A stretch of DNA of 51,424 bases from Salisapilia sapeloensis CBS 127946 (lineage: Eukaryota > Protista > Oomycota), in assembly GCA_023334545.1 (NCBI GenBank), contig JAADVB010000128.1, positions 1 to 51,424 on the forward strand. The letters run 5' to 3'. Positions 31,037 to 51,424 of the stretch are shown piece after piece; position 1 is the stretch's first letter; every line of letters begins with the position of its first letter. Position numbers and translations under genes: made by a program. The notes below the pieces were generated by a model. That model saw only the letters and a program-made list of their open reading frames with translations, was not told the DNA's origin and ran no database searches.

Positions 31037-31350
31037 CCTGATCTTTTATTCGCGTTTGTTCGACTCGTTTGTTATTCGACTCGCGATGGTATGAAAAAGC
31101 CAGATTTTTTATCGTAATCGTGTACGACGTATGCGAGGCAATGAGGTGGTCGATACGACCAGGCACGGCGTAGATCGAGACGTGTACGAAAGGATAAGAA
31201 ATGCCTTTGCGACGGCAGCTGCACCGAGGATCACACCAAGTCTTGGATGTCGTGCGGTCTGAATCGAGGGAGCTGCACAGAGAGAACAGGGGGTACACAT
31301 AGTCCGAATGGATATTTCCAACGCAACCAACAATCCGAACGACCGTCGAC

Positions 31351-34300
31351 ATGGCCGGTCGACGCCACGAGGACGTCCTGGAGGCATGCACGCGCAAGCT
31401 CAAGCACGATATCGTCGACATACGAGCGAGGGCGCTCAAGAGCATGGCTCTTAAGATACGAGGCGGACTATGGCCTCGGGTGTCCGAGCAGACAGACCGA
31501 CAGGTTGTGCGTGAGCTTGCCAAGCAATTGCTTCGGTGCTTGGAAGAACCTGCGTTGGAGGAGCAGGTGCTGCAAGTGCTCCGGCTGATCCTGCAGGATG
31601 ATCGTAATGTCGTATTGAACGCACTGCGAGAAGAACGGGCAGCTGAGCGACTTGTACGAGCTTCGGATGGAACAACTGGCGACAAGAAAGACATTTATGA
31701 GCAGGTGATTTCATTGCGTACTTTTGGACTAGTCGGTCATGTAATTTAGAATTCGTGTGCAGCTCTTGGACAAGATTTACGCCACCAAGGAGACGAGAGC
31801 TGACGCATCATCAGTAGTAATAGAGAACAAGCCTACAAAGGCAGCGAATCGACCGGTTGGCTGCGTCGGTGCAAAGACATCTACTCTGCAGACGCATTCG
31901 TACAAATCAGAGCGACATAACTTTACAGAAGCACAGCGTAATGCAGCAAAAGAGAATTCTAGTAGAGCAAAGAATGACTCTGACCTGCATGAATTGATCA
32001 AGACTGGATGGAGATTTCCACCAGTCATACTATCCACCACGGACGACCAGCGGATCTTTGAGTACCAAGTCAAGTTACGTCTGCGAAGCACGACGACTGA
32101 CATTGTAGAAATGTGCGACTCCTTTCGCCACACTCTCTTGCGTGATTTCCCTTCGGAAGTGTTTTTACAGCGTCCAGAAGTCCTTGAGCACTTTATACAG
32201 CTAACACAGTTGCCTCTCCTGTCAAAAGAGAATGAAGAGCGTCAAACTCAAGCGTCTGCAATGGAGGAAGCCTTCCGACTGTCCTTTGGCGTAAACTACT
32301 TTGACAGCGTCCACTCCACATCTTTCTCGTGTAAGACCAGTAACTTGACCTGTGCAGTATTTCTCGCTAGTCTCCGAGCCATTGAAGGCTTTGTCGTCGC
32401 GATTAAAAAGGCTAGAGACGTGCACACTGACCCTGTGTTCCAAGTGCATGCGACTGCCGGTCAAATAGATGAAGAAGGGAATGTAAGTGGCGAAGCGAAC
32501 TATCCACGAAGTGATGCTGTTGTGGTGACAAAAGTAAAACAGGAGACCATGCCATGGTCCTTGGCAGGGGCAGCACACAAGATCATACTGTCTCTCCTCC
32601 CTCTACTACGTTCCAGCATCCACCCTAGGATGCATATATTAAACGTGTTGCACGAGACAATAACTCTGGTGCGTGAAAACGGTCCGGAGGATGCGATGGT
32701 AGAAGTTGAACGAAAGAGAGTTAAAAACTTGCTGGATATGATAGCCAAAGTGGTGGGGTCTAAGACCCCAGAAGAGCTCAAGACTAGCTTTTCATTCAGT
32801 GTCTTTTGGCGTGTGTTGGAGCTGACGGTCAAGCTCTTGACAATGTACCCAGCAGATTTTTACACCTCGGATGGACAGTCATTCATCCCAGGTAACGTGC
32901 AGGAACTTGTACGGAAGAGTGCGGCAACGTCGGCCTTTGAAAGTATCTTTAGAGTACAATCCGACGACTTGTCTGCGTTTGAAAGATTGGCAAAGGTCGA
33001 TGCTGGTCTGGAAGAGTACGTAGACAACGTAGGACGTTCTAAAGCAGAGTGGACGGAGATAGAGGACTTGGTGATAATTATGAGACAGAAGAAGGAATGG
33101 AAGAGTGTATCGAATGAAGAGTTGGAGACAGCGGCAAAGCTAACACAGGCACTCACTCTATATGGCGAAGCAGATGCAATCTCAATCGCAGAAAGTCTAG
33201 CTCAGATGTCTTTTGTGGGTGACGCTAGCGAGATCATTCAGTCTATTATACAAAATATGATAGTCTACGTCATGTCAACAGCAGAGCTGGAAGCGTGTAT
33301 TGGTGCAGCTTACTTTAACCGTCTCCACACTCTCTTGACTGCTGGAAAACCTTCTTGCGGACCAGGTATAAAGAGTGCAGTATATGACGCTCGTACGTTC
33401 TCCAGTGTGTTTACTGTCCTGGCCGAGCGAATGGATGAAGACAAGGCAGAGACTCTTTGGGGTCTCGTTCAAGTGGTCATCGATTTTGCTCGACAGGACG
33501 GTCAGTTAGATAGTTTTAAACCTCTCCTGCCTTTTATTCAGCACTATGCCTACATGGACCCGTCCACAGTTACTAGCAGTAGGCATCGTGCGCTTCAAAG
33601 AACGCTGGTGGAGATTGCGAATGAGCTGGAAAGGTCTTGCTCGAGCTCGGAACGGATCGTACTGATCAGTCGCTGTCTGTTGCATGCATCTGCCTACGTC
33701 CGTCGAGCAGCGTCTTCGGGTGTCTTGCATCTCCTCTCCGACCATGCTGATGAGTCATTTAGTCCGGAACGAGAGACATTGCTAGATCCTTTCTCCGACG
33801 CAGATATCATTGCAAAGACACTGCTGCAACGGACACTTGGGGGACGGAGTGAAGTGGACAGCTCGAGACTCATGAATCAGATATCCAACCTACTCCAGCT
33901 ACTCGAGACGAGAGACTTGTCCGTACGCAGAAGAGCGTGGAGAGAACTGGCCATGCTGGTCGAAGTCGTAAGTTGCTCGTCTCTTGGCCTGCTGGTAGAG
34001 ATGGGGAAGGTCACAGCTATGCTGGATGTCATCCAGACAGCACTGCGAGATGACGATGAAGTCAAGATGTGGGCGTTGCAAGTGGTGCGGAACTTTATCC
34101 AGATGGACCGAGACTTTCGACGAATGCTTGTGCAAAAGGAAGAGTTCTGGATACTTGTCCTCTTCAGTGTCTACTCTTGTTCGTGGGAGATTAAGAGTGA
34201 AGCGTATTGGATCCTCTTCCTACTGACGTGTGATGCAGATATGTTTGTACTGACGAGAGAAACGAGACTGAAGGAAGAGGTCTCGATCCCTCTCTTTCTA

Positions 34301-37285
34301 AAAGGATCCTTTGGGTTCCCACAAAAGTACTGGGATAGAGGTCTAGTGTCCACCACCACACTGTCTTGTACGATCCAGAGACAAGGGGCACGAATCGAAA
34401 AGCCAGTGACGACGGTGGAAGAGACGGATGACCTGGAGTTTGTTGTGGAGAAGGTAACGTCAGCGAAGACGCATGCCAAGTTCTTGAATGGCGTGTATCA
34501 CCTGCTGCAGCTTTGTGGCCACCCACTCGTACAGCAGCAGATGAGAGATAGATGGAAGCTGGTATTCCAAAATTATTTAACCACCCCTCCGAAGAGTGTG
34601 CGAGACGAAATGGTCGTCAGCTGTGTCGTATGTGTCGTGCACTCGGTTCTCGACGGCATGGACCGAGAGCAGCAATTCCAAGTCTTTGTCGTTGTCAAAA
34701 AGAACTTGCTCCCGTTGCTGACTAGAGCCGAGAGCACGCTGCTGTCTCTTCAGATCATCCGTCTGCTGCTGTCGCTTGCAGGGGACACGCACGTGTCAGA
34801 TCTCTTTCTCTCCCTTGCAGTGGACACGGATCTCCTTTCTATCATCGCGACGCAGTACACGTCCGTCTATTCTAGTCAGAGCGTCTTGCATGCCTCTGCT
34901 CTGGAGCTGGTGCTTGCTTTCCTTATCAAAGCCCAAGCAGAGAAGAGTCGAGAGGACCCGACGGTCTTCTTGGACCTCATTCTGAACCGACTGCAGCCGA
35001 TGCTGGCGCCTATGATCGCAGTCGTCACCAGCTACCGCCTCCCGACGTCTTTTGACGGGTACCAAGTGTACAGTCTTGCTGTCCAGTGTCTAGTCGCACT
35101 GTATCAGACGTTCGGGACGGATGCATTAACGCGGCGAGGTGTCATGGCCGAGGATGGTGGGTCCTGGATGTCTCGACTGCTCTATGACCACACGTCGCAT
35201 ATGCGGTACCTTGGTTTCCGTATGTTGTCCATGCAGGAGGAAACGGACGGCAGCTGTCTCCAACTTGCGCTAGACACTGCTCTGGATGCCTCCGAGGCGG
35301 ATATGGTGCGGAGCGAGGCAGTTCACGTCGTCTCGAATGCCGTGATGCGAGATACGAGCAGTGTTGATGGCATGGGAAGTGAATTTGTACTCAGTACGAT
35401 GAACAGGGTAAAGGAGCTGTCGTATGACCTTCCATTCACAACGATGGCATTCGTACGACTCTTGCGTGTGCTGTGGGTGCATCGGAAGGACGGACAAACG
35501 TACGGCGACATGGAGACTTCGATGGACGTCCATTGGATGAACTGGTTGGTCCAGAGTCTGTCGCTCAGAGAAGAACGAAGTAGTGTTAAGCTTGATGTAT
35601 GGATAGCTAAAGTCCTGCCTGCAGTCTTGCAGCGCATGGACGACTGTCTGTTTCTTATTCAGTCGCTTTTCCGAACGGATGCAGGAGAAGAGAACTTTAG
35701 TCGATTAGCACAGGACACTCCTCTTGTGTATCAGTTGGTAGAGCTCATGAACGACCTGAACGTGTACTTGGGAGAACTAGATCCAGTCACGTCGGACGCC
35801 AAGGAACTAGCGTACAAGCTGCTGACGTCGTGCAGTTCGACGCTGTCATCTCTTGTTCTGTCTCCTGTCGTCATGCAAGCAGTTGATGTTCATGCGCTTT
35901 CCTCCAGCTTGATGAAAGTGCTTACGGCTTTATTACAACCTCACCACCCACTCTCTTTTCGTGTGTCTTTATCTCCAGTCATCATCGCAGCTAGTGCTAC
36001 TTGTGTGGACGAATCGCAGGAGGACTTGAGACAGCTAGGTATGCACCTGTTCGACGTATTTAAGGAGACGTGTACTCCAGATCATGATGGAAAAGGGGAT
36101 GTACCAGCACAAGAGCTACTTGTCATGGCGTTTGCGTTGGGTAGTGTTTTGGAGAAGAGTGAGTCGATTAGAAGACTTGTGGTGCTCCAAGACGGTGTAA
36201 AGCACAGCGTACAGTCTCTGAAAGAATTGTGTACTCATATTCGAGCGACTAGTACGAATGCTAAGGTGATGACACACGTTTCCATCCAGTTGCATATCCT
36301 TGGCTGTCTTGTCGGTGGAGACTTTGAAGCCCAGCAGTCTGCTCACCAGGAGAAACTTCTACCGGCTCTGCTAGAGAACTGGGACCTCCTACAGGCGGAT
36401 AAAGCTACCTTTTCTGATACGATGCAACTCTTGACCAACTTTGTGCATGGGAACAAGGAGGTGAAAAGAGTATGTATGAAGGCGTACAAGTCGAACATTC
36501 TTCTTTCAAAAGCGTTTGAGCTCGTACTTCCCCTACAGTCTCGAAAGATCGGACGCATGCGAATGCTGGAAGAGCCACCAGTAGTAGACGCTAGTACGAG
36601 CGACCTCGTGAGTACGTTTTTGAAAAGCATCTTGCTACATAACGAATGTCTCCAGTGGAGTGTCAAGTCCGGGTACATCGATCGGCTCGTGGATGACATC
36701 GAGCATCGTCTTTCGGTGCTGAGAAAGACGGAGAAAAGGGAGACAAGCCACGTCCATCACTTGGCGAATCTGCTACACATGGTAGCCAATGTGGCGTGCC
36801 TAGAAGAAGGTGCGCAAGTTCTTTGCAATCGGTCCTCTGGTCTCTACCATATCTTCTCCGATGTACTGTCTTCGACCGACGATGAGGTGGCACTGGTCGG
36901 TGCTCTCTTCATCCGCAACTTAAGCTGCTCCAAGTGTGCTAAGACACACTTTAGCTTATGGGAAAAATCCATGGCTCTCTTACTCGAGAGCTTAGAGAAG
37001 CATATAGAGCATACGGTTGGAAGGTTTCTGGCGTATGGACTGTGGGGACTTGTGTCGGATCACCAATCGGCTCGAAGTCTGTTGCTTCGAGGAGATACGA
37101 AACAGTTGATAGGGCGTTTGCTGTCATCCAGGACGAGAGGTGTGTTGCGTATAATTATATTTCGAATATCGAACGAGTTCACTGACGCTATTCCTGCAGA
37201 TGTAAAGAGCGAAGGAGCGGAGGAATTAGGCTTGAGTCTAACTGGAATTTTACGTTGGCTAGACGGAGACCAAAGGGATGAGTAG
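31351..37285 (+). CDS. RTTN: Rotatin-like ARM-repeat centriole/basal-body protein (intron 31705-31762; probable 60-nt intron 37140-37199)
   Basis: N-terminal RKLKHDIVDIRARALKSMALK and RDFPSEVFLQRPEV match the rotatin N-terminal motifs. The intron cag|gtgatt...gtgcag| joins the ORFs in frame. About 1900 aa, helical. Confidence 0.85.
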
Positions 37286-37521
37286 AGAGTACATCGTGGT
37301 GAAGTCGCAAATTTAAAGACAAAGTTCAGGCAAGAGTGCGTAGTGGAAGCATTTAACAAGTGGATTTTTGACAAAGACAGACAAGTACCCTTTCCTTCCA
37401 TCGATCATACGACCACGCGATGCAAGTTTCGAACAAGTCAAGTCTGGATGGAATGAATTGTCTCCGTACTACCTACACATTCGCATTTACACACTAACGT
37501 TTATTACGTTAAGCAAGAGCG

Positions 37522-39771
37522 ATGGGGCTCTACTCGACCAAAGAGGAAGAGGAAACCCTCCTTCGCTTCCTACGTTACCACACGTGGGAAGTTAGTGTTG
37601 GGTACATTGTCATGCTCTTCTTTTGCGTCATGCTATTGCAATACACATCCATCGTGAACGCCCAGCTTCGCTCTGGAGATACTTCTCTCCAGCAGAAAGC
37701 TATCCTTCCGACGTTCCGATCGATGCTTAAAGCACTTGCCATCTCATCTGGCATTATCATGTGTATCAATTCAGCTTTTATCTATACGGTGGATGTGGGC
37801 CATTCACACCTCCATGCGTATATCGACATGCTCTTGAGCGGTCAGCACTTCACACTCGTACTCGCACCCATATTCATGTACCAAAAGAGTTTGTCGGATG
37901 CAGCTCTCTTTCGGTCCATAGGGATTACTATAGTCTTTACGATGGCAGGAATACCGTTGGCCTGGATCCATGGCGTCCCGGACTACACGTTCTTGTACGC
38001 AAATTGGGTCATAACCACCGTCTTCTTTATTTACTTAGCGATTCGGCCGCCCGCAAGAGCTTTTAAAAAAGTAATTCGACGCTACTCGATCTTTGCCTTC
38101 GTCCAACTCTTTTTCAACCTCGCACATTTGGAACTTGTACGGTCGAAGCACTTGGATATCGCGAGTCCAGTCGCTTCCATCACTTCGCTCTGGATGACCC
38201 TCACGCCGTATATGGTCTGGAAGATTATCAAGTCTGACACGAAGTACTGGCGTGGCAAAGGCAAGAGCAGTGTCGGACTCCAACAGCTCTTTTCAGAGCG
38301 TATCAAGTTGCCTGAACGAGTATCCGCTGCTGGTTTCCACATGCTCATTGAAATGCATCGAAGCCACGTCCTCGATTTCTCCTGTCTTGGGATGAAACAG
38401 CAGATTGGTACAGGCGAGAATTCAACTGTCTTTAGCGGCGTGATGCGAGGCAAGACGCCTGTTGCATGCCGTGTCTACCTTCCATCGGACCTCTCGGATA
38501 CTGTGATTGCACAGTACTCGCAAGAGGCAGCTCTGTGTGGTAACCTCACGCACCCGAACATTGTTCGTTTTCATGGACTTGCAGTCTGTCCTCCATCAAT
38601 TATTATGGTCTTTGAACTATGTAGAGGAACACTGAGGGACATTGTACAACGAAGCGACTCGGAGTATGCATGCAAGAACCTTGTGACAATCACACAGATG
38701 CTGGATGCAGCGCGAGCTATAGCCTTCCTCCACAGTTTTAAGCCTCCCTTTATTCATGACGAATTGGATCTTTCCAGTTTCCTTGTCGATACTGACGGTG
38801 TTGTAAAGCTCAATGGATTTGGGGATAGTCGACTACGAAGTCAGTTCCATCCGGAGAAGGAAAAGAACCGACTAAAATGTTCGTGGCGACGGCGTGCTGG
38901 TCTGGAAATTGACTCGGAAGGAATGCTTTTATCCACTCATAAACACTCTAACTCCGCGGACACGAATGACAAGGCAGTTGAGACTTTAAACGCTGAACGT
39001 GCGGACGTATACGCCTTGAGCATGGCATTTTGGGAAATTATTCATCCTCACGTTGAGATGCCTCGAGGTGGAGACGAGCTGTTTAATGATCCAGAGTGGC
39101 GGCCTGGCTTTTCTTCTCTCGTACCGGTCGAGCTACAAGAACTTGTGAGGTGCATGTGGGATTCAAACATTCAGATGAGACCGAGTGCGCATGACGTTGT
39201 CAAGCAACTCGAAGATTTACAGGAAGTCGCCCTGGAGGATAACGTCGAGTCCGTTGCGTCCACCGTCAGCAATTGCCAAATAAGTGAGCAAGCGTTGACA
39301 GCAAGGGAACGATTCACTGGCTCGGATGCTGTCCGCAGCTTGGTAATGACGAACGAAGTAATGTTTCGATGGGAAGGCGTTCGCTTGTGCAATGCCTGGA
39401 TGGAGGCTGGATTCCTCCATGAAGAAAGGCATTTGAAGAGGTTTCAAAACAAGCCCGACTTGAGATACTACTTTAGTGCACAGGCAAGAATGGAAACCTC
39501 CATCTCTATCGAGGATGACTCGACGATTATGGTGAATACACCAGAGTGCAATAGTGGCAGTAAGTCGAAGGCGTTGTATCGAAAAGAGACGGCGTGTTCA
39601 TGTCAGTTGCACGCAAGAAGGCTAGCCTTGCCAAGAAGAAACTGGATGAATGCGTTTGGTGTATATGAACAGGAAATGTTGTCCAACACGGAGAATACAG
39701 TAAGCAGTTCCTTGGAAAACATGCTGACCTCGGCGCTTGTTGACGAAAGATCGACTACAAGTCCAGAGTAG
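37522..39771 (+). CDS. Multi-pass membrane (7TM-like) + TKL-like pseudokinase + DEP domain receptor (GPCR-TKL type)
   Basis: About seven hydrophobic segments in aa 20-240, ending in DTKYWRG. Kinase fold (IGTGENS, HPNIVRFHGL, ADVYALSMAFWEI). DEP-like segment FTGSDAVRSLV...GVRLCNAWMEAGFLH...YYF. Confidence 0.82.
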   Translation: MGLYSTKEEEETLLRFLRYHTWEVSVGYIVMLFFCVMLLQYTSIVNAQLRSGDTSLQQKAILPTFRSMLKALAISSGIIMCINSAFIYTVDVGHSHLHAYIDMLLSGQHFTLVLAPIFMYQKSLSDAALFRSIGITIVFTMAGIPLAWIHGVPDYTFLYANWVITTVFFIYLAIRPPARAFKKVIRRYSIFAFVQLFFNLAHLELVRSKHLDIASPVASITSLWMTLTPYMVWKIIKSDTKYWRGKGKSSVGLQQLFSERIKLPERVSAAGFHMLIEMHRSHVLDFSCLGMKQQIGTGENSTVFSGVMRGKTPVACRVYLPSDLSDTVIAQYSQEAALCGNLTHPNIVRFHGLAVCPPSIIMVFELCRGTLRDIVQRSDSEYACKNLVTITQMLDAARAIAFLHSFKPPFIHDELDLSSFLVDTDGVVKLNGFGDSRLRSQFHPEKEKNRLKCSWRRRAGLEIDSEGMLLSTHKHSNSADTNDKAVETLNAERADVYALSMAFWEIIHPHVEMPRGGDELFNDPEWRPGFSSLVPVELQELVRCMWDSNIQMRPSAHDVVKQLEDLQEVALEDNVESVASTVSNCQISEQALTARERFTGSDAVRSLVMTNEVMFRWEGVRLCNAWMEAGFLHEERHLKRFQNKPDLRYYFSAQARMETSISIEDDSTIMVNTPECNSGSKSKALYRKETACSCQLHARRLALPRRNWMNAFGVYEQEMLSNTENTVSSSLENMLTSALVDERSTTSPE

Positions 39772-40922
39772 TGAATGCTGGAGTTAGCTCATATAGGTAA
39801 GTAATTAAAAGAGCAGTGCCCATACAGCAGCAGAAGCAGGATTGGGATTTAATGGAAAAGCTCGTAATACAAATGAAGCCGCCAATCAAGATTTTATCAA
39901 CGCGATTTATGTAGCATTGTGTTCGATTATTCGATGCGAGAATTCGGCATTGGCGTCACATAAGTAGATGGCGAATGAATAGATTCCTGAGTAGATGAGT
40001 TGAAGACATATTTCATCAGTAGCGCAGTCTTTCGAATTAAGCTTTGCTTTAAAACACTAAAGCCAAGGTAAATTCGAATGAAGCCCATACGACAGGGTCT
40101 GCAGAAGAACTATTAGCATTCCAGTCATTCTGTGGATAGCCAGCTTAAACAAAACTATAGCATCGCATGAATTAATATTGCGCTCATGTATGCTTGCACG
40201 CGTGTGCTTTGTTATATGGAGCATGTCCGAAAAGTTGGTGCATCATAATAGAGCGTACTGATTGCGTCTTGATATTCCAAACCTCTTTCCAAAAACTTCG
40301 CTGAATGTAGAGCTCTTAAGCGCGGTAGGAGGTAAGATGCAAGTCCCATGAATCCAATTTAAAAGCACGCAAAATTTGCCGGTGGACAGCTTCATGAGGA
40401 TTTCAGTCAGTATACATTGACTAAAGGTTTCCGTTAGAGCGTATGTTGTGTACTCCAGGCTGATTAGATGTGGATGAAATGTTCGAACGCCTCGATCTTT
40501 GGAGTCCGAGAGTACTTGAAGCGAATAATGAATTCGATATAGAATCGTGGACTCTCCTGAACTATTGTCATATAGACTAGGTACATGAAAGAAAATAATT
40601 TCGCAGAAATCCATTTATTCCAGTTTCTTTCTACTTTTGCTTTCGTGTACTTGCAACCTTTTGGCTTTGCCATATTGAGCGGATCAGCTATATCTTTGCG
40701 TGCAATGGCTGGATAACGGCAGACATGCTATCGTAGCTAGATTACAAGATGCCCTGTGAAAGCACTGGTAGAAGCTATACCTCTTGCTTTTTAAATGTAC
40801 ACACCGATAAAACGCTTTCCAAGTGTCCGGTAACCTCGATCGGAGTTAAAATTGCATCTGGAAACTTGTGTTCCACAGATGTACCATCGAATATCAATAT
40901 CGCTTCGATAGACTGGAAACCA

Positions 40923-42635
40923 ATGCTGGGTCGATGGAGCAGACGACAGGCATCTCGTGCTTTGCTGAATGGAAACACAACAAGATTGCTGAGAACAGGA
41001 AAAGGACGCAACCGCCGGCCTGTTGAAGAAGCCTTTGACGCTGCACCTGAGGCGCCAAAACCAAAGCCAAAGCCTTCGAAGCCACAGCGGGCAGTGACGG
41101 TGCCGCCATTTATCCGAGCACGAACGCTGGCCAAGGCACTTGGTGTCTCTGTCGATAGAGTATTTGATAAAGTGGTTTATCGTCGAGACAGGAAGCTGCA
41201 CATGGTCATTGGCAGTGAGCGATGGCAGTTTGACAATGTAAAGAATGTCATTTTCCCATTCGACATCGCAGATGCCATCGTCGACCGTCTTGGAGCTCGC
41301 ACCGACTACGACGAAGTGGAACCAACCTTTAGTAGTCTAGCGGAAAATCATGAAACCGGATGGGTGACTCGAGATCCTGTGATAGCAGTTCTTGGACATG
41401 AAGACCATGGTAAAACGACATTGCTTGATGCATTGCGAGGCACCAACGTCCGGAAGAGAGAGGCGAATGGGATCACCCAAACCATCCACGTGTGTGAGAC
41501 TTCGCTGGATGAAGGTCGCTCGGCCACGTTTCTCGATACGCCCGGCCAGTTCCATTTCTTCCGCATGCGAAGCAGCGCTGCTCAACTAGCAGATGTAGTG
41601 GTGCTTGTCGTGGCAGCAGATGAGGGTTGCTGTCTTCAGACGGAGGAAGCGATCGGAGCTGCTGAAGAAGCCGAGCTTCCTGTGGTCGTCGCCATCAACA
41701 AGGTAGACTTGGTGTCGGACGAAAGCGTCATGGAGTCGTTAAAGCAAGAGCTTCGCGAGTATGTGGCGCTCGAGGATAGTCCAATGGTCGAGATCAGTGC
41801 AAAGGACGGTAAAGACCTGGATAAGCTGATGACGGCGATCAAAGAGGCGTCAGACCAAAGCTCTGTGCAGAATCGGCTGAGAGCTAGAGGAGACTCAAAA
41901 GCGGAGGGTGTGGTGCTGGAGAGTCGGAAGCAGCCTGGAAAAGGCCACGCTCTTAAAGTCCTGGTCAAGCATGGCGTATTGAAAGAAAAGAACCACTTTG
42001 CAGCTGGCATGATTCATGGCGTCGTCCGCAGTTTGTGGGATGCACAAGGGGAACGAGTAAAGGAAGGAGTAGCCGGAAAGGTTGTAGAAGTCGTATATGC
42101 GAACAAAAGTAAAAACAAGGACGCGCCGATCGAAGCAGGTTTCTTTGCCTTAGAGGAAAAGAGAGCGATGCAGGTGGTAGAACAGAGAGAGCTGCAGAAG
42201 GAGCTGGAAGAAAGCGTTGTGTCAACTGGAAATGCGAATGACGTAGAAGAGGAAGCACAGGAGGAAGTACAGGAAGGGATGCAAGAGGGGGTGCAGGAGG
42301 ATTTAGAGGTAGTGGAAGAGCTGGATGTGAACGACATGAAGGTGGTGCTCGTGAAGGCAGACGGAGGCATTTCTCTCGCGAGCATCCAGGACACTGTAGA
42401 TGAGATGCCGAGTATCTTGACCGCCAAGATCGGCATTGGCAACGTGTCTGTAAATGACATCGACACAGCTTTTGAGCACAAATGCCCTATCTACGCTTTT
42501 AACGTGAAGCTGCTGAAGAGAGAAGCTAAGTATGCAGCGTCTAGAGGTGTTCAGGTACACATTTATTCCCAGGTGCATGAGCTACTGGACGACGTTGAAC
42601 GTTTACAGGGAGATAATCAGTCGGAATCGAAGTAG
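40923..42635 (+). CDS. Translation initiation factor IF-2-like GTPase, probably mitochondrial, lacking the C-terminal domain IV
   Basis: IF2-N-like segment (IRARTLAKALGVS). G1 GHEDHGKTT, G2 GITQ, G3 DTPG, G4 NKVD, then domains II and III. The Arg-rich presequence-like start is at ATG 40923. The in-frame ATG at 40749 is probably UTR. Confidence 0.85.
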   Translation: MLGRWSRRQASRALLNGNTTRLLRTGKGRNRRPVEEAFDAAPEAPKPKPKPSKPQRAVTVPPFIRARTLAKALGVSVDRVFDKVVYRRDRKLHMVIGSERWQFDNVKNVIFPFDIADAIVDRLGARTDYDEVEPTFSSLAENHETGWVTRDPVIAVLGHEDHGKTTLLDALRGTNVRKREANGITQTIHVCETSLDEGRSATFLDTPGQFHFFRMRSSAAQLADVVVLVVAADEGCCLQTEEAIGAAEEAELPVVVAINKVDLVSDESVMESLKQELREYVALEDSPMVEISAKDGKDLDKLMTAIKEASDQSSVQNRLRARGDSKAEGVVLESRKQPGKGHALKVLVKHGVLKEKNHFAAGMIHGVVRSLWDAQGERVKEGVAGKVVEVVYANKSKNKDAPIEAGFFALEEKRAMQVVEQRELQKELEESVVSTGNANDVEEEAQEEVQEGMQEGVQEDLEVVEELDVNDMKVVLVKADGGISLASIQDTVDEMPSILTAKIGIGNVSVNDIDTAFEHKCPIYAFNVKLLKREAKYAASRGVQVHIYSQVHELLDDVERLQGDNQSESK

Positions 42636-46316: not shown

Positions 46317-48119
46317 TTACCCGTGAAATGGCACCACCTTTATGGGCAAATCGCTATTCACTGACAACTCTACACCAGGAGTGGAAATGATTTGGTGTGG
46401 ATCCTCCAGCAACTTCAAATCAAACTTGCTGATCATAGAGCAAATCACGATCTGTAATTCGACCATTGCCATTCGCTGTCCAATGCATTGTCTTGGTCCG
46501 GTAAGCTGTTATCAAAAGAGACATCATTAAGCACGTATAATGATTTAAATGGTGAATCAGAACGTACGAAAATCGGAAACTGGGATGGCGTGAAAGCGAT
46601 AATGTCTCCCGTTGTCTGGTCGATCCAGCGCTCGGGCTTAAACTCATGTGCGTCTTCTCCCCAAACAGAAGACAAGAATCCTGTAGCCCGCATGGCAGCC
46701 ATGATCTCAGTGCCTTTGCTCACGTACGTACCGTCAACAAGTGTAGTCGACTGTAGGGCACCTCGCGATGACATAGGGACCGTCGAGTTGAGACGAAGTG
46801 TCTCTCGAATCGTACCCTCCAAGTAATGGAGTTGATCAATCTCTTCGACGGTCGGAACTTCTGCGTTTCCGCCCAGAAGATGGGGAAATTTGCTCTTGAT
46901 CTCAGCGCGAATTTTACTCACAACTTCCGGATGGCGATTCAGTTCGACGAGGATCCAGGCCATCGTAGTGCTTGTTGTCGCGGATCCAGCGAAAAAGAAG
47001 TTGAAAACCATATCGCGCATTAATGTCGGATCCGCATCCAACTTTCCAGTCGTTGAAGCTTCCTTGGCTTGACTGTCTAAGAATAGAGTAATCAAGTCCT
47101 TCGGACGAGACATCGAGCTGTCATCGACGTGACCATCTTCCATCTCCTGCTTTTTCTTGTCAATGGACTTGTGGATGATGTCGTAGACCAATCCGTCCAA
47201 GTACTGTTTGCTCTTGGCAACTTCTGCTTCTTCACCAATACCAAACATCCGTCGGAGTGTCCAAAGCCAATGTGGCTGTGAAAATCGACGAAATGTTCCT
47301 CGGGACATGACGCGTATGCTTTCGATAAAGTCGTTCGTCTCTCCTCGCAACCCTTTCTGCATGCTTTCCAAATCAACGCCAAACCCAATCTAGGCTCGCA
47401 AGACTGAGTCAAATGATTTACAGCAAGGTAGCAAGTGTTCTTTTACCTGAGTAAAGACATCCGTTGTGAATTCAGTGAACGAGATCCGAGCGGGAACGAC
47501 CGTACCGCGCTTTGCATGTTCACTCAAGACTTGCACGAATTCACGGCTGCGCTCTCGAATCGTCGTATGCATGACATCTTTCATCATTTGCATGCTGAAC
47601 AAATGGGAAGCTGTCTTTCGTTGAAATTTCCAATGGCTTCCAACACTGTTAACAATACCGTATCCGAGTAAGTCGTAGTTGCGGTCAAGTGACAATGGGC
47701 TTCGGACAAAGATGGCACTCTGTGTCTTGTAGACGTCTTCGATATGTTCTGGGGCCGAGACAACTACCATTGCAGGACGATTCAGAACTTTTAGCATCCA
47801 GGGTTTCCCTTCCTTCTCCTCGCACACTTCGGTAATCCATTCACTCATCCTAGCGTATCAATCGTACAAGTCGTAAGACTTGCGAACTTAATTATTTAGA
47901 TGCTGAAACTTACCGATGACGATTACGAGCAAGCTGAAGGGTGCTACCCAAGAGTGGTAGCGCTCCATCCGGGTGAGGCAATGGCTGACCATCAGGGGTG
48001 TAAGCACGAGGTCTTTGGACATAGGATAAAAGTATGTATCCTGCAGCAAGCGGAAGAGCTACAACCGCCACCGATTGAGGTGTAGAAAGCTGCTCAAAAG
48101 TTTCCATTGCACGGTCCAT
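46317..48119 (-). CDS. Cytochrome P450 (CYP86-clan-like fatty-acid hydroxylase type), 4 exons
   Basis: N-terminal membrane anchor and Pro-rich hinge, WKFQRK, I-helix FFFAGSATTST, ETLRL, PERW. The spliced haem motif reads F|LTGPRQCIG. Stop at 46319-46317. Confidence 0.93.
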
Positions 48120-48610
48120 TTTCGTTTGACGAAAGTTCTCTTACGGGGCCGACCGGTAGTTGTCAAGTGAAGGGGTCTGATTTTCGGAGGTCCAGCGTTG
48201 TCGGTACGTCATTTTACCAAACGCTACCAGAGTATCCTAAAGCGTTGCAACACACATCAAAACCATCCAGGTCGGTCACGTTTCTTGTAAACAAATCGTT
48301 AAGTCAGCAAACGCAATGCATCTAGGTAGATTTGTTAGAATCAGTATGTGCGAAGAGATATTGATTCGAACGATAGTAGCGTCATGTTAATAAAAGGGCG
48401 TCAGATCTACAGAAATATCGAATTTGTACAAGTGTGGTGGTTGAAGCATCGTTCTGAATGAACCATAGGAATGATACATGACAGATCTAGCACTCCTAGT
48501 CTGATAATGGACCACCTCTGAGCATAGTTTATCTTTTCTTTAGTCAGAGTTTAAAGCTAGAACCAGCACGATAAGAATCGAGGCAAGACTTCCAAAGGTT
48601 TTGCCACCTG

Positions 48611-48623
48611 AAAAACATAAAAG
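48611..48623 (-). terminator. RNA polymerase III terminator (oligo-T runs) downstream of tRNA-Gly
   Basis: The minus strand reads ...CA-TAC-TTTT-ATG-TTTTT-CAGG immediately after the tRNA 3' end. Confidence 0.7.
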
Positions 48624-48625
48624 TA

Positions 48626-48696
48626 TGCGCCGTCCGGGAATCGAACCCGGGGCATCTCGATGGCAACGAGATATTTTACCACTAAACCAACGGCGC
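48626..48696 (-). tRNA. trnG-GCC: tRNA-Gly (anticodon GCC)
   Basis: The reverse complement is GCGCCGTTGGTTTAGTGGTAAAATATCTCGTTGCCATCGAGATGCCCCGGGTTCGATTCCCGGACGGCGCA. It has an acceptor stem, a TCTCG/CGAGA anticodon stem with loop TTGCCAT, and a GGTTCGATTCC T-arm. A and B boxes are present. Confidence 0.96.
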
Positions 48697-49501
48697 TTGT
48701 TAAATCGATCATTTACATATTTATATAAAAATTATTTTAAATGTTAATACAAGCTCATTTTATGATAAACTTCACCTACAAACCCTGTAACTACAAAAGT
48801 CTTTTTATTTGAAACGAAAGTATTCAAGTTGATAGGAAGACCGTATAGCTACCAAAGGGTCCAAGTAGAGTGTGGTACTGATTGAAGTTAAAGTTGTGAT
48901 GAAGTTAACACAAACTCTGGAACATCCAACTAAAACAGCGGTGTGGACAGAGTACCTAGAATAGCCAGACGTTAAGCAGTCTTCTTTGATTGAACTCGAA
49001 CGGATTGGTATATAGGGCACGTTAAAGATAAAACTAAAGTAGCTTTCCTCAAACGGTTATTGCATTTAAAAGATCATTCAATGATCAAGTTAAAAGAACA
49101 AGCTACTCTTTAAATGATTTACATTCCAATCTAGATTGGCCTGCACGATGCAATCTAGACGATATCCTTTATCGACAACCTTTTTTTCGATTTGCGTAGA
49201 TCAAAATAAATTTGTGCCCAGCCTAAGTATGATTTGCTTTCCTAGTCCTTGCATTTTATCAGAATACAAGCAAACACACAACATTGGCTTCCAATTGAGC
49301 CAAGCCCGACGGCAAGATGCTAGACATGCTGCAACGGTCTTTATAGATATAGAGCAGTCAAAGCGATTTAAATCAGTGTTAACAGCCAAGGGAGTTCTCG
49401 TTAACCTTAAAAGAAAGAAAAATGCTAATTGCTGAAAGACGAATTTTTGACTTTGGTCCCGGAAAAAATAAATCTTTCGGTGATCAAGTTAAGCTTACGC
49501 A

Positions 49502-51387
49502 TCACTCGAAGACGGAAGCATTCGAACAGATGAGATCCTCAACGTCGTATGAAGTGAGCTTTGTGCCTCCGACATCGCTAGCAAAGTACATAAGATTAGC
49601 TACTGAAGAATGCCATTGATATGAACGATGGCTTTGTTACGTACAGATACACTAGGCACGATGATGTTGGGAACCATAACTGTAAATTGAGCTTCATCTT
49701 ATCACCTTCGTCAAACTTGCCTGTGTTGTCTGTGTTGTCGGACAAATCCCTACTCAATAGGAGTCAAACTTTCCGACGGAGAAGAGAGATTGTGCAGGAC
49801 TTACAGATACTTTAGGTTGGGAAGTCTCGCGCGATCATGTTCTGTATTACGGAAAACTCCAGTTTTCCACACTTTTCTCGGTTTCGGAGAGAATCCATAA
49901 CCAACTAAATGGTTATCCTTTAGTTGTCTATACCATACAAAGTTTTCATTAGCAAAACGATGTACAAGTATAGAGTCTTGTCGACATCATCGAGCGTATC
50001 GACATACATTTTTTCGATCAACGGAATGTAGGCGTCGATAGTTGTTAATTCGTTGTGTAACATAGAGCTGTATATGAATAAAGTTAAAGTGAAGAGCCTC
50101 ATTGCTATTCGAGGGTTACGTACACTTTCTTAAGTTTAGGCCACATGCCACTCCATTTATTTATCTTCGCGCGATCCGCAATTCTTTCACATGCTCAGCA
50201 TACGAGTATTAAAGCTTCCATATTCGAATATCGCTACGTACAGTTTCGTCACCGATTCAAGAGTGTAGGCCTGCGGATTACCGATCACTTTCATATCGTT
50301 CCAACTCACATCTCTGTTCGAATGGCTCAGTTACATACTCTTCGCGAGGAGCTAAAATGACACATACATAGTGCGAAGACTCTTACACTTGTTCCCACGC
50401 AAGCTATCTTTTGACAATTTGTTGTTTGAAATGTCCCTACCCTCCACACTTGTAACCCTTTGAATAAGTTTATCATGCAAATGTGCCTTACAAGTAATTT
50501 AGCGGCATCTTGTCACATTTAAAATCAGTAAGCCAATTGCTATTTAGTCTCCTATATCACATGTAAATAGTCAATTATGCGGACAAGGCAAATGAATGCC
50601 TATATCGTACGCCTCAGTTAGTTTCGGCATCTTTGCTCCAAATTCTACAACGTCGTTGCTCTCTAGATTTCTGCACAAAAATGTTGAATTCAAGCCAGAG
50701 AATAACTAGACGAATACTTACAAGTACTCGAGGTGTTTCCAGTTTCCAGTGATCTTCTTTAATCTGCCGTCGGTGCTATTTCTAAATTGTATTTGTTATA
50801 GAACATATATTTAGCTATCCAAGTACAGCTTTGACAGCAACATGTACAGTTTGCGAAGGTTGGGAAAACGGTCTGCATCCAGGCTCTCGAACAAAGTTCC
50901 GTTCATATACCTGCTCAAGTGAAAATTTAGTACATATACTACTTGGAGACATCTATAACCACATCAGTCATACAGCTCTTGTAGAGTAAGAGACGTTCCA
51001 GAGATCTCTGTAATCTGGTTCTTTTTAATGACACTGCACGAACCGAATGAGTAGATGTTCATTTAACTAGTAAGTGCTTGAAAGCCAACGTACAGAGTTT
51101 TGGCGTGATCGAATTGACTTGCATTGATCTTTGTAACGCTGTTATTGCTCAGATCGCTACAATGAAGAAATATGAGTGATCTGCTCGTGATAATTACATT
51201 TCACATTAAACAACATTATTTTCAAGTCGTATGGAAAGGATATAGCAGATAACATTTCATCATCAAGCTCCTTGTGGGCAAATGCATCATAGAAATAATC
51301 GTTGGCTTCTGACGCCAAAGCTTGCCACGTAGCCACAAGGAGGAAGAGCAGCACAACTTGCACACTTGGGCGCTTCACCCCAATCAT
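49502..51387 (-). CDS. Secreted leucine-rich-repeat protein encoded by at least 14 short exons; 3' end uncertain (may extend to about 48805)
   Basis: Manual splicing gives signal peptide MIGVKRPSVQVVLLFLLVATWQALA-SEAND..., then LKII|DLSNNSV, AKTL|VIKKNQI, LQEL|YMNGT, LRKL|NSTDG, LEYL|NLESNDV, LTEA|RLNSNWL, LNYL|DISNNKL, LRTI|DVSWNDM, VTKL|IADRAKI, LKKV|SMLHNEL, IEKI|QLKDNHL, LKYL|DLSDN and LVYL|DVGGTKL. There are thirteen GT-AG introns of 51-80 nt and no in-frame stop until 49504-49502. Confidence 0.85.
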
Positions 51388-51410
51388 GGTCGGATAGTTG
51401 AACTAAATCA

Positions 51411-51417
51411 AAAGTGA
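51411..51417 (-). promoter_or_regulatory. Possible oomycete-type initiator element (YCAYTYY) upstream of the LRR gene
   Basis: TCACTTT on the minus strand, about 25-30 nt upstream of ATG 51387. It is a short motif and could occur by chance. Confidence 0.35.
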
Positions 51418-51424
51418 CTACCTA

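What the first reader, a model, noticed from the sequence alone, without database searches (positions are those of the whole stretch)
49502..51387. Hidden secreted LRR gene built from one-repeat-per-exon, frame-symmetric cassettes
Seen: on the minus strand, 13 consecutive introns all fall after the second base of the codon for the last hydrophobic residue of 'LxxL', i.e. at the same place in each LRR (LxxL|xLxxN). Introns: 51214-51157, 51093-51034, 50973-50911, 50847-50782, 50721-50671, 50610-50552, 50491-50437, 50367-50314, 50241-50184, 50123-50068, 50007-49928, 49804-49750 and 49644-49578. Donors are mostly gtacgt/gtatgt/gtaagt-like. Internal exons are 63, 60, 63, 60, 60, 60, 69, 72, 60, 60, 123 and 105 nt, all multiples of 3. 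The spliced frame is stop-free for about 350 aa, starts with a signal peptide, and has unusually short (20-24 aa) repeats whose sequences differ strongly from each other. The ORF track shows only fragments of it. By contrast, the other LRR gene in this window (44.4-44.9 kb) has an intronless LRR block. Known: one-LRR-per-exon organisation occurs in plant ERECTA-type receptors, and in brown-algal (Ectocarpus) ROCO LRR genes it has been linked to exon shuffling of ligand-binding surfaces. Inference: this may be a diversifying secreted recognition or effector protein. Any exon can be skipped, duplicated or swapped without a frameshift.
Basis: partly seen in the sequence, partly recalled or inferred. 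Interest (0 to 1): 0.85.

Follow-up and report, generated by a model that had tools for sequence, protein, structure and literature searches.

The report
Expressed one-repeat-per-exon secreted LRR gene
This is a real, transcribed gene of a divergent oomycete that encodes a small secreted leucine-rich-repeat protein with one repeat per tiny exon, a layout already known from plant receptor kinases, brown algae and ciliates, and the available data give no sign that the exons are skipped or were recently shuffled.

Summary
It splices to 1104 nt (367 aa) without a stop. All 13 introns are GT..AG, phase 2, and split the codon of the first Leu of LxLxxN.

- **RNA support:** contigs confirm 8 junctions exactly and 2 partly. 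Introns 3 and 9 are not covered. Intron 13 is retained in two runs of one sample, which gives a 358-aa form. The transcript ends near 49444, so there are no further 3' exons.
- **Protein:** it has a signal peptide, 13 LRRs of mostly 20-21 aa, no TM segment and no RxLR motif.
- **Host genome:** a divergent, apparently unannotated oomycete.
- **Gene family:** DNA contigs show further copies with the same exon borders. First-stage notes of this scan (unchecked) report about 20 similar genes on other DNA of this genome.
- **Known precedent:** rice LRR-kinase introns have the same position and phase (PMC3050792).
- **Diversification idea:** no exon skipping was seen, and exons and introns within the gene are no more alike than shuffled sequence. 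It stays untested at family level.

The parts
51403..51404 (-). Acceptor AG of a 5'UTR intron; the upstream 5' exon lies outside the window
   Evidence: RNA contigs in X1 and X4 leave the genome at 51403 and continue with 76-83 unlike letters. The sequence reads ttgatttAG|ttcaac.
51388..51402 (-). 5'UTR part of the first coding exon
   Evidence: Covered by RNA contigs X1 rec4 and X4 rec8.
51215..51387 (-). Coding exon 1 (57 codons plus 2 nt): start ATG, signal peptide and N-terminal flank
   Evidence: A paralogous DNA contig matches 51213-51390 only, at 85% identity, and stays open. That marks both the ATG and the donor as borders.
51313..51387 (-). Signal-peptide coding part (residues 1-25: MIGVKR, hydrophobic core, QALA then SE)
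   Evidence: Highest Kyte-Doolittle 11-residue window is 3.0, at residues 9-19. No other hydrophobic segment is present. The cleavage site is inferred from the -3/-1 rule; SignalP was not run.
51157..51214 (-). Intron 1 (58 nt, GTTGTT..TAG, phase 2)
   Evidence: Exact RNA joint 51156/51215 in X4.
51094..51156 (-). Exon 2 (63 nt, LRR 1)
   Evidence: RNA X4 rec7.
51034..51093 (-). Intron 2 (60 nt, GTACGT..CAG, phase 2)
   Evidence: The X4 loose end of 9 nt at 51094 equals the start of exon 3. Partial support only.
50974..51033 (-). Exon 3 (60 nt, LRR 2)
50911..50973 (-). Intron 3 (63 nt, GTATGA..CAG, phase 2), with a tandem GAG|CAG acceptor
   Evidence: No RNA coverage. A splice is required, and 7 frame-compatible GT..AG solutions exist; this one keeps the LRR register.
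50848..50910 (-). Exon 4 (63 nt, LRR 3)
50782..50847 (-). Intron 4 (66 nt, GTACAT..TAG, phase 2)
   Evidence: The X1 loose end of 15 nt at 50781 equals the end of exon 4.
50722..50781 (-). Exon 5 (60 nt, LRR 4)
   Evidence: RNA X1 rec3. A 43-kb DNA contig matches 50711-50770 at 83%, with an AG placed at the same exon start.
50671..50721 (-). Intron 5 (51 nt, GTAAGT..CAG)
   Evidence: Exact RNA joint.
50611..50670 (-). Exon 6 (60 nt, LRR 5)
50552..50610 (-). Intron 6 (59 nt)
   Evidence: Exact RNA joint, with a 1-nt cut ambiguity.
50492..50551 (-). Exon 7 (60 nt, LRR 6)
50437..50491 (-). Intron 7 (55 nt)
   Evidence: Exact RNA joint.
50368..50436 (-). Exon 8 (69 nt, LRR 7)
50314..50367 (-). Intron 8 (54 nt)
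   Evidence: Exact RNA joint, 28 nt on the shorter side.
50242..50313 (-). Exon 9 (72 nt, LRR 8)
50184..50241 (-). Intron 9 (58 nt, GTACGT..AAG), inferred
   Evidence: No RNA coverage. A splice is required, and 10 frame-compatible solutions exist. This one has the consensus donor, a typical length and keeps a full repeat, but its AAG acceptor is unusual.
50124..50183 (-). Exon 10 (60 nt, LRR 9, weakest match to the motif)
50068..50123 (-). Intron 10 (56 nt)
   Evidence: Exact RNA joint in X1 and X2.
50008..50067 (-). Exon 11 (60 nt, LRR 10)
49928..50007 (-). Intron 11 (80 nt)
   Evidence: Exact RNA joint in X1 and X2.
49805..49927 (-). Exon 12 (123 nt, LRR 11 with a basic insertion of about 21 aa)
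49750..49804 (-). Intron 12 (55 nt)
   Evidence: Exact RNA joint in X1 and a matching loose end in X2.
49645..49749 (-). Exon 13 (105 nt, irregular LRR 12, Cys339)
49578..49644 (-). Intron 13 (67 nt, GTACGT, CTAAT at -22, TAG). Seen only retained; retention ends the frame at TAA 49598-49596 (358-aa form)
   Evidence: Contigs X1 rec1 (49493-49674) and X3 rec6 (49444-49664) run through it. Both runs are from one sample. Retained-form translation. Splice signals.
49502..49577 (-). Exon 14 (76 nt including TGA 49504-49502): last LRR-like unit and C-terminal flank with Cys360
   Evidence: The sequence is transcribed, but its joint to exon 13 was not observed.
49444..49501 (-). 3'UTR, ending at an A-run
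   Evidence: X3 rec6 ends at 49444, and depth is zero from 48700 to 49427 in all four RNA runs.

Best explanation
This is an ordinary, mostly constitutively spliced nuclear gene of a divergent oomycete. It encodes a 367-aa secreted protein that is LRR-only: a signal peptide, a short N-terminal flank, 13 short LRRs (mostly 20-21 aa, two with insertions) and a short C-terminal flank. It has no membrane anchor and no kinase.

**How the layout arose (inferred).** Each repeat sits on its own exon because the array grew by tandem duplication of an exon-plus-intron unit. Every copy inherited the same intron position (the first Leu codon of LxLxxN) and the same phase 2. A 2-2 symmetric unit is the only kind that can duplicate or be lost in frame. 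Within this gene the copies have since diverged to background nucleotide similarity, so the layout here is a historical footprint, not evidence of ongoing shuffling.

**Family (shown and inferred).** The gene belongs to a multi-copy family in this genome whose members share exon borders. At least one other copy, or a divergent allele, shares an identical exon 1 and upstream region and then diverges sharply. That pattern points to recombination or gene conversion between copies.

**Function (inferred).** The protein most likely acts outside the cell as a ligand- or protein-binding solenoid at the wall or surface, possibly alongside the LRR receptor kinases of the same design that unchecked first-stage notes report elsewhere in this genome.

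Shown: structure, expression and copy number. Inferred: secretion, fold, binding role and the duplication history.
For: **Gene model**
- 14 exons, 13 GT..AG phase-2 introns, an open 367-aa frame.
- RNA contigs give 8 exact joints and 2 partial ones. There is no depth in introns 1-12 or in the intergenic 48700-49427, so DNA carry-over is unlikely.

**LRR nature**
- The LxxLxLxxNxL-type pattern hits 10 times, against a mean of 0.78 and a maximum of 5 in 5000 shuffles. Spacings are 20-23 residues or sums of these.
- blastp against the Pfam-verified LRR block of the neighbouring gene gives E = 9e-7.
- All 16 weak PDB hits of the one-repeat profile are LRR proteins.

**Secretion features**
- An N-terminal hydrophobic core is the only hydrophobic segment. 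There are 5 N-x-S/T sites, 4 Cys and no RxLR motif.

**Family**
- DNA contig rec5 matches exon 1 alone at 85% and stays open, with 10 of 57 residues changed.
- rec2 matches exon 5 plus its donor at 83%.
- rec4 (depth 71.5) forks at 51213 into rec1 (37.1) and rec3 (35.1).
- About 20 first-stage notes describe the same design elsewhere in the genome (unchecked).

**Age of the repeats**
- Exon-exon identity is 0.552 against 0.528 for shuffles. Intron-intron identity is 0.569 against 0.516. Neither maximum exceeds the shuffled maximum.

**Host and precedent**
- The neighbouring IF2-like GTPase and kinase have their best hits in oomycetes at 41-52% identity, and the IF2 tree places the window inside oomycetes with 100/100 support.
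- Precedent for the same intron position and phase: PMC3050792.
Against: - Introns 3 and 9 are inferred only.
- Intron 13 was seen only unspliced, so the 367-aa C-terminus has no RNA support and a 358-aa form may be the main product in that sample.
- The RNA evidence is assembled contigs of low depth (3-8) from one study, which drop rare isoforms.
- The 15 codons visible upstream of the ATG in the 5' exon are stop-free, so an upstream start is not strictly excluded.
- No relative was found outside this genome. The exon-1 search of 1.84 billion representatives and a metagenome scan both returned nothing.
- Fold, Pfam membership and secretion were not computed for the whole product.
- The half-depth/double-depth fork could reflect two divergent alleles and not two loci.
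Confidence: 0.78

Rival explanations
1. Diversity generator. The symmetric one-repeat exons are used to produce many binding surfaces, either by alternative exon skipping within a transcript or by frequent exon gain, loss and swapping among family members. This would resemble what is proposed for brown-algal ROCO genes and would yield a variable secreted recognition or host-interaction repertoire.
For: - All 12 internal exons are multiples of 3 with 2-2 phase, so any of them could be skipped in frame.
- The gene is multi-copy.
- One copy is identical through exon 1 and upstream, then more than 20% different, a mosaic pattern.
- RNA contigs of exon 1 stop exactly at the exon end in two runs, as expected if two different second exons follow.
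- Brown-algal LRR exons are reported to be alternatively spliced (PMC11378527).
Against: - All 8 joints seen join adjacent exons.
- There is no excess similarity between exons or introns within the gene.
- The paralogous exon 1 shows about 12 non-synonymous and 6 synonymous changes, roughly consistent with relaxed constraint and not with clear positive selection.
- Coverage is too thin to see minor isoforms.
Confidence: 0.13
2. Host-directed secreted effector or decoy. The oomycete secretes LRR-only proteins that mimic or bind host LRR ectodomains, and the plant-like intron position reflects a shared origin with plant LRR receptor modules.
For: - Signal peptide and no anchor.
- Same intron position and phase as rice LRR-kinases.
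- No syntenic counterpart next to the IF2 or kinase orthologues in Pythium insidiosum or Globisporangium polare.
Against: - The lifestyle of the organism is unknown here.
- There is no RxLR or LFLAK motif.
- The repeats are 20-21 aa and lack the plant-specific SGxIP segment, so this is not the plant LRR class.
- Phase-2 LRR introns occur in several unrelated lineages, so convergence is plausible.
Confidence: 0.06
3. The annotated start or end is wrong in a way that changes the protein's nature: the frame begins in the off-window 5' exon, making the hydrophobic segment an internal signal anchor, or the retained-intron 358-aa form is the only real product.
For: - 15 stop-free codons precede the ATG in the RNA loose end.
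- Intron 13 is seen only retained.
Against: - Paralogue conservation begins 3 nt before the ATG and is lost upstream.
- Intron 13 has the same GTACGT donor as four other introns of the gene (three of them seen spliced), a CTAAT at -22 and the family position and phase. The exon after it continues the LRR pattern up to a stop.
Confidence: 0.1

Closest known systems
Plant LRR receptor kinases with one LRR per exon (rice LRR-kinase group 5; ERECTA-type), PMC3050792
   Same: Introns in the LRR domain split the first Leu of xxLxLxx in phase 2 and separate single repeats. The exons are short and frame-symmetric. The layout is explained by exon duplication.
   Different: Plant exons are typically 72 nt and encode 24-aa plant-specific repeats, and they sit in proteins with a transmembrane segment and a kinase. 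Here the exons are mostly 60-63 nt (20-21 aa repeats without the SGxIP segment), the protein is LRR-only and soluble, and the host is an oomycete.
Brown-algal ROCO / type I LRR genes (Ectocarpus, Saccharina), PMC3341825 and PMC11378527
   Same: A stramenopile lineage with one LRR per exon, phase-2 symmetric exons and LRR-only family members. Exon shuffling and alternative splicing have been proposed.
   Different: - The exons are uniformly 72 bp.
- Judging from the exon consensus quoted in that paper, the LxL motif lies mid-exon, so the intron position differs.
- Many members carry ROC-COR domains and are cytosolic.
- Their exons are similar enough to trace shuffling, whereas the exons here are at background similarity.
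Tetrahymena LRR genes with 90-bp exon arrays, PMC6564038
   Same: Extreme phase-2 bias, tandem arrays of equal small exons and a very large lineage-specific family.
   Different: The exons are exactly 90 bp (30-aa unit), the host is a ciliate, and the arrays are linked to a retrotransposon. The authors stated that such arrays had not been described elsewhere.
Oomycete LRR receptor-like kinases (Phytophthora sojae PsRLKs), PMC8254037 and PMC3268121
   Same: Extracellular LRR proteins of oomycetes. First-stage notes report LRR-RLKs of the same exon design in this genome (unchecked).
   Different: No kinase or TM segment here. Those papers do not mention intron structure, and I could not fetch an oomycete LRR-RLK locus to compare.

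Membership tests
Leucine-rich repeat proteins (LRR superfamily) | Tandem 20-30 aa units with the LxxLxLxxN/CxL segment | tested here: met
   10 pattern hits against 0.78 expected (maximum 5 in 5000 shuffles), with spacing of 20-23 residues. Column counts: L/I/V at position 1 in 12/13, N at position 6 in 9/13, L at -3 in 10/13.
Leucine-rich repeat proteins (LRR superfamily) | Sequence similarity to a profile-verified LRR domain | tested here: met
   blastp of the spliced product against the neighbouring gene's Pfam LRR_8 block gives E = 9e-7. The one-repeat profile against PDB gives only weak hits (E 0.1-1), but all 16 are LRR proteins.
Leucine-rich repeat proteins (LRR superfamily) | Curved solenoid fold | not testable with these tools
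   The spliced product has no reference and is too long to type, so structure prediction and fold search were not run.
Plant-type modular LRR exon design (as in rice LRR-kinases) | Phase-2 intron splitting the first Leu of xxLxLxx | tested here: met
   All 13 introns, compared with PMC3050792.
Plant-type modular LRR exon design (as in rice LRR-kinases) | 72-nt exon encoding a 24-aa plant-specific repeat (LxxLxLxxNxLSGxIPxxLGxLxx) | tested here: not met
   Exons are mostly 60-63 nt, and the repeats have no SGxIP segment.
Plant-type modular LRR exon design (as in rice LRR-kinases) | Transmembrane segment and kinase domain | tested here: not met
   There is no hydrophobic segment after the signal peptide, and the transcript ends at 49444.
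Brown-algal exon-shuffled LRR (ROCO type I) | Traceable nucleotide similarity between LRR exons (recent shuffling) | tested here: not met
   Exon pair identity has mean 0.552 and maximum 0.683, against 0.528 and 0.714 for shuffles.
Brown-algal exon-shuffled LRR (ROCO type I) | Alternative use of LRR exons in transcripts | tested here: inconclusive
   Only adjacent-exon joints were seen, but the data are low-depth contigs that drop rare forms.
Brown-algal exon-shuffled LRR (ROCO type I) | ROC-COR GTPase domains | tested here: not met
   The 367-aa product consists of the signal peptide and LRRs only.
Tetrahymena 90-bp LRR exon arrays | Exons of exactly 90 bp | tested here: not met
   Exon sizes are 60-123 nt.
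Oomycete host-translocated effectors (RxLR, Crinkler) | RxLR(-dEER) or LxLFLAK motif after the signal peptide | tested here: not met
   No match.

The most novel reading that the evidence does not exclude
An otherwise intron-poor oomycete keeps a large family of LRR-only and LRR-kinase genes built from 60-nt phase-2 cassette exons. Copies exchange segments, as suggested by a partner that is identical through exon 1 and upstream and then sharply diverges. This would give a recombining repertoire of secreted and surface binding proteins. The intron position identical to plant LRR kinases would then reflect either a shared ancient LRR exon module or a strong convergent constraint.
Probability: 0.15. 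Interest if true: 0.75.

Novelty: new member of a known kind. Interest (0 to 1): 0.42.

Why it matters
**Annotation.** ORF-based or prokaryote-style gene calling misses this whole class of gene, and the genome appears unannotated in the collections searched. RNA-guided annotation would probably recover a sizeable secreted or receptor LRR family.

**Evolution.** This adds an oomycete to the short list of lineages with one LRR per phase-2 exon: plants, brown algae, ciliates and vertebrate glycoprotein-hormone receptors. It shares the exact intron position with plants. That makes it possible to test whether this layout is inherited or arises repeatedly.

**Biology.** Secreted LRR-only proteins could act as partners or decoys of oomycete LRR receptor kinases, whose ligands are mostly unknown.

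Tried and rejected
1. **Annotated model and organism name.** I looked up the products of three neighbouring intronless ORFs. None is on record.
2. **Exon 1 search.** phmmer of exon 1 (57 aa) against 1.84 billion representatives gave 0 hits. This used the only job of that kind.
3. **ESM Atlas.** Look-ups with exon 12 and exon 1 gave scores of 0.73 and 0.59, which is noise level.
4. **Metagenome scan.** The scan with exon 1 gave no tblastn-confirmed relative. Exon 12 is too short for that tool.
5. **One-repeat profile.** Against PDB there were only sub-threshold hits. hhalign against the neighbouring LRR block was uninformative.
6. **Route to oomycete LRR-RLK loci.** A search with the kinase domain of the neighbouring 7TM-kinase returned only orthologues without LRR domains.
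7. **Synteny.** Loci around the IF2 and kinase orthologues in Pythium insidiosum and Globisporangium polare show no LRR gene.
8. **Related species.** DNA runs of two other organisms from the source study have nothing at 80% identity or more.
9. **Second copy in the window.** tblastn found none. Only generic LRR similarity to the 44.5-kb gene appeared.
Rejected on RNA evidence.
11. **Left out.** Pfam scan, whole-protein homology search, the listing of cluster members, AlphaFold and fold search of the spliced product. It has no reference, read-through references are not accepted here, and it is too long to type.
Full report
**1. Observation**

On the minus strand, 14 exons from 51387 to 49502 join into 1104 nt (367 codons plus TGA at 49504-49502) without a stop.
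- All 13 introns are GT..AG and 51-80 nt long. Donors are mostly GTACGT, GTATGT or GTAAGT.
- All introns are in phase 2. Internal exons are 63, 60, 63, 60, 60, 60, 69, 72, 60, 60, 123 and 105 nt.
- The split codon encodes L/I/V in 12 of 13 cases (A once). It is followed by xLxxNxLxxI, and a Leu sits three residues before the next split. The intron therefore always cuts the first Leu of the LxL strand motif.
- Twelve introns carry an in-frame stop and the other (intron 11) shifts the frame, so none can be read through. This is why an ORF list shows only fragments.

**2. Transcription**

Four runs labelled RNA, from one study of the same organism, hold parts of the gene. When laid on 48700-51424, their contigs behave as follows.
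- They skip exactly introns 1, 5, 6, 7, 8, 10, 11 and 12.
- Loose ends of 9 and 15 nt match the neighbouring exon across introns 2 and 4.
- Depth is zero in introns 1-12 and in the whole intergenic stretch 48700-49427. The contigs are therefore RNA and not carried-over DNA.
- Introns 3 and 9 are not covered. Because the frames on both sides are fixed by confirmed junctions and the unspliced sequence has stops or a frameshift, a splice must exist at both. Intron 3 also has a GAG|CAG tandem acceptor, and intron 9 an unusual AAG acceptor.
- Intron 13 differs. Two contigs (49493-49674 and 49444-49664) run straight through it. Both runs come from one sample. Retention ends the frame at TAA 49598-49596 and gives a 358-aa product with a 16-residue tail.
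- Intron 13 nonetheless has a GTACGT donor, CTAAT at -22, a TAG acceptor and the family position and phase. The exon after it continues the repeat pattern. I keep it as a probable intron that is spliced inefficiently or in a regulated way. The spliced joint is unobserved.
- One of those contigs ends at an A-run at 49444, and nothing lies below that. The transcript therefore ends there, and the suggested extra exons down to 48805 are not used.
- At the 5' end the contigs leave the genome at 51403, after an AG, and carry 76-83 other letters. This is a 5'UTR intron whose upstream exon lies off the window.

**3. The protein**

- Residues 1-25 have a basic start, the only strongly hydrophobic stretch of the protein and an A-x-A-like end.
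- There is no later hydrophobic segment, no RxLR or LFLAK motif, five N-x-S/T sites and four Cys.
- An LRR core pattern hits 10 times, against 0.78 expected and a maximum of 5 in 5000 shuffles, at spacings of 20-23 residues.
- The product aligns with the Pfam-verified LRR block of the gene at 43.5-44.9 kb at E = 9e-7.
- A one-repeat profile finds only LRR proteins among its 16 weak PDB hits.
- The repeats are short, mostly 20-21 aa. Exons 12 and 13 carry insertions.
- Secretion, fold and binding role are inferred. I could not run Pfam, homology search or structure prediction on the whole product, because a spliced protein has no reference here and is too long to type.

**4. Whose genome**

- The products of three neighbouring ORFs are not on record, and exon 1 finds nothing among 1.84 billion representatives. 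The genome seems unannotated in these collections.
- The neighbouring IF2-like GTPase has its best hits only in oomycetes: Globisporangium 50%, Pythium and Phytophthora 45-49%, Albugo 43%, Saprolegniales 41-44%.
- A tree places it inside oomycetes (100/100), but on a long branch without a resolved position.
- The neighbouring kinase is 51-52% identical to Globisporangium proteins, and the local gene order is partly shared with G. polare.
- In this window most genes are long uninterrupted ORFs of up to 1842 aa. Thirteen introns in 1.9 kb is therefore exceptional locally.

**5. Copies**

The probable source DNA run holds further pieces.
- An 867-nt contig matches only 51213-51390 at 85%. That span is exon 1 plus the GT of the donor and 3 nt before the ATG, and the flanks are unlike. 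With the 18 of its 26 differences that the tool listed, exon 1 stays open, keeps a signal peptide and changes 10 of 57 residues. The sequence after its GT gives an immediate in-frame stop, so this copy also needs a splice there.
- A 43-kb contig matches 50711-50770 (exon 5 and its donor) at 83%. Its adjacent letters place an AG exactly at the exon-5 start.
- The contig carrying 51213-51424 has depth 71.5. At 51213 it forks into the reference path (37.1) and a second path (35.1). The second path is unlike the reference for 105 nt, then matches 18 nt at the same spacing, then diverges again. Two sequences are therefore identical through exon 1 and upstream and very different afterwards. They are either two loci or two very divergent alleles.
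- The RNA contigs of exon 1 end exactly at the exon end in two runs, as a fork in the RNA graph would produce.
- First-stage notes of this scan list about 20 further one-LRR-per-exon phase-2 genes in this genome, both LRR-only and LRR-kinase. They are unchecked, but they agree with the contig evidence that this is a family.

**6. Is it shuffling now?**

- Within the gene, exon pairs are 55% identical against 53% for shuffles, and intron pairs 57% against 52%. Neither maximum exceeds the shuffled maximum, so there is no recent internal duplication.
- All observed joints link neighbouring exons.
- The layout is best read as the footprint of old exon-plus-intron duplications. A 2-2 symmetric unit is the only kind that can multiply in frame.
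- Family-level exchange remains possible, given the mosaic copy, but it is not shown.

**7. What is known**

- Rice LRR-kinase genes have LRR-domain introns that split the first Leu of xxLxLxx in phase 2, and 72-nt exons that encode one repeat. The authors explain this by exon duplication and shuffling (PMC3050792). This is the same position and phase as here.
- Brown-algal ROCO LRR exons are 72 bp and phase 2, and are alternatively spliced. That paper also notes phase-2 introns in gonadotropin receptors (PMC11378527; PMC3341825).
- Tetrahymena has tens of thousands of 90-bp LRR exons flanked by phase-2 introns (PMC6564038).
- Human NLR LRR exons are also strictly modular (PMC6642158).
- Papers on oomycete LRR receptor kinases do not mention intron structure. 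Full-text searches found no description of this design in oomycetes.

**8. Verdict**

- The reading as a hidden, expressed, secreted-type LRR gene is supported.
- The idea that it is a diversifying cassette system is not supported for this gene and is open for the family.
- It is a new example, in a new lineage and with shorter 60-nt cassettes, of a known gene architecture.
- Interest is moderate. The value lies in annotation of an overlooked family and in the plant-identical intron position.

Noticed in passing
window 51403-51424 and beyond the window end: The LRR mRNA has a 5'UTR intron. RNA contigs leave the genome at 51403 after an AG and carry 76-83 nt of an upstream exon that lies outside the window.
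   Followed up: partly
window 51213-51424: The DNA contig over exon 1 and upstream has double depth (71.5). At 51213 it forks into the reference path and a second, strongly diverged but collinear path. This is either a second locus or a very divergent allele sharing an identical 5' part.
   Followed up: partly
window 48626-48696 (-): tRNA-Gly(GCC), about 750 nt downstream of the LRR gene's 3' end. It is the only Rfam or ARAGORN hit in the window.
   Followed up: yes
window 51283: RNA run X4 (a different sample) reads C instead of T. The change is synonymous (Ala35, GCA to GCG) and also occurs in the 85% paralogue.
   Followed up: yes
window 50911-50916 (-): Intron 3 ends in a tandem GAG|CAG acceptor. 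Either site keeps the frame, and they differ by one residue.
   Followed up: partly
window 29246-39771 compared with L002: The gene order (PDZ/PH gene, very long rotatin-like gene, 749-aa kinase) is partly shared with a Globisporangium polare contig. The kinase has exactly the same length (749 aa) at 51% identity.
   Followed up: partly
window 40749-42635 (+): On an oomycete tree the IF2-like GTPase sits on a very long branch (1.79 changes per column).
   Followed up: no
window 48000-51424: The LRR gene and its surroundings are more AT-rich (GC 0.40-0.42) than most of the window (0.46-0.55). Its GC3 (0.49) lies within the range of the neighbouring genes.
   Followed up: partly
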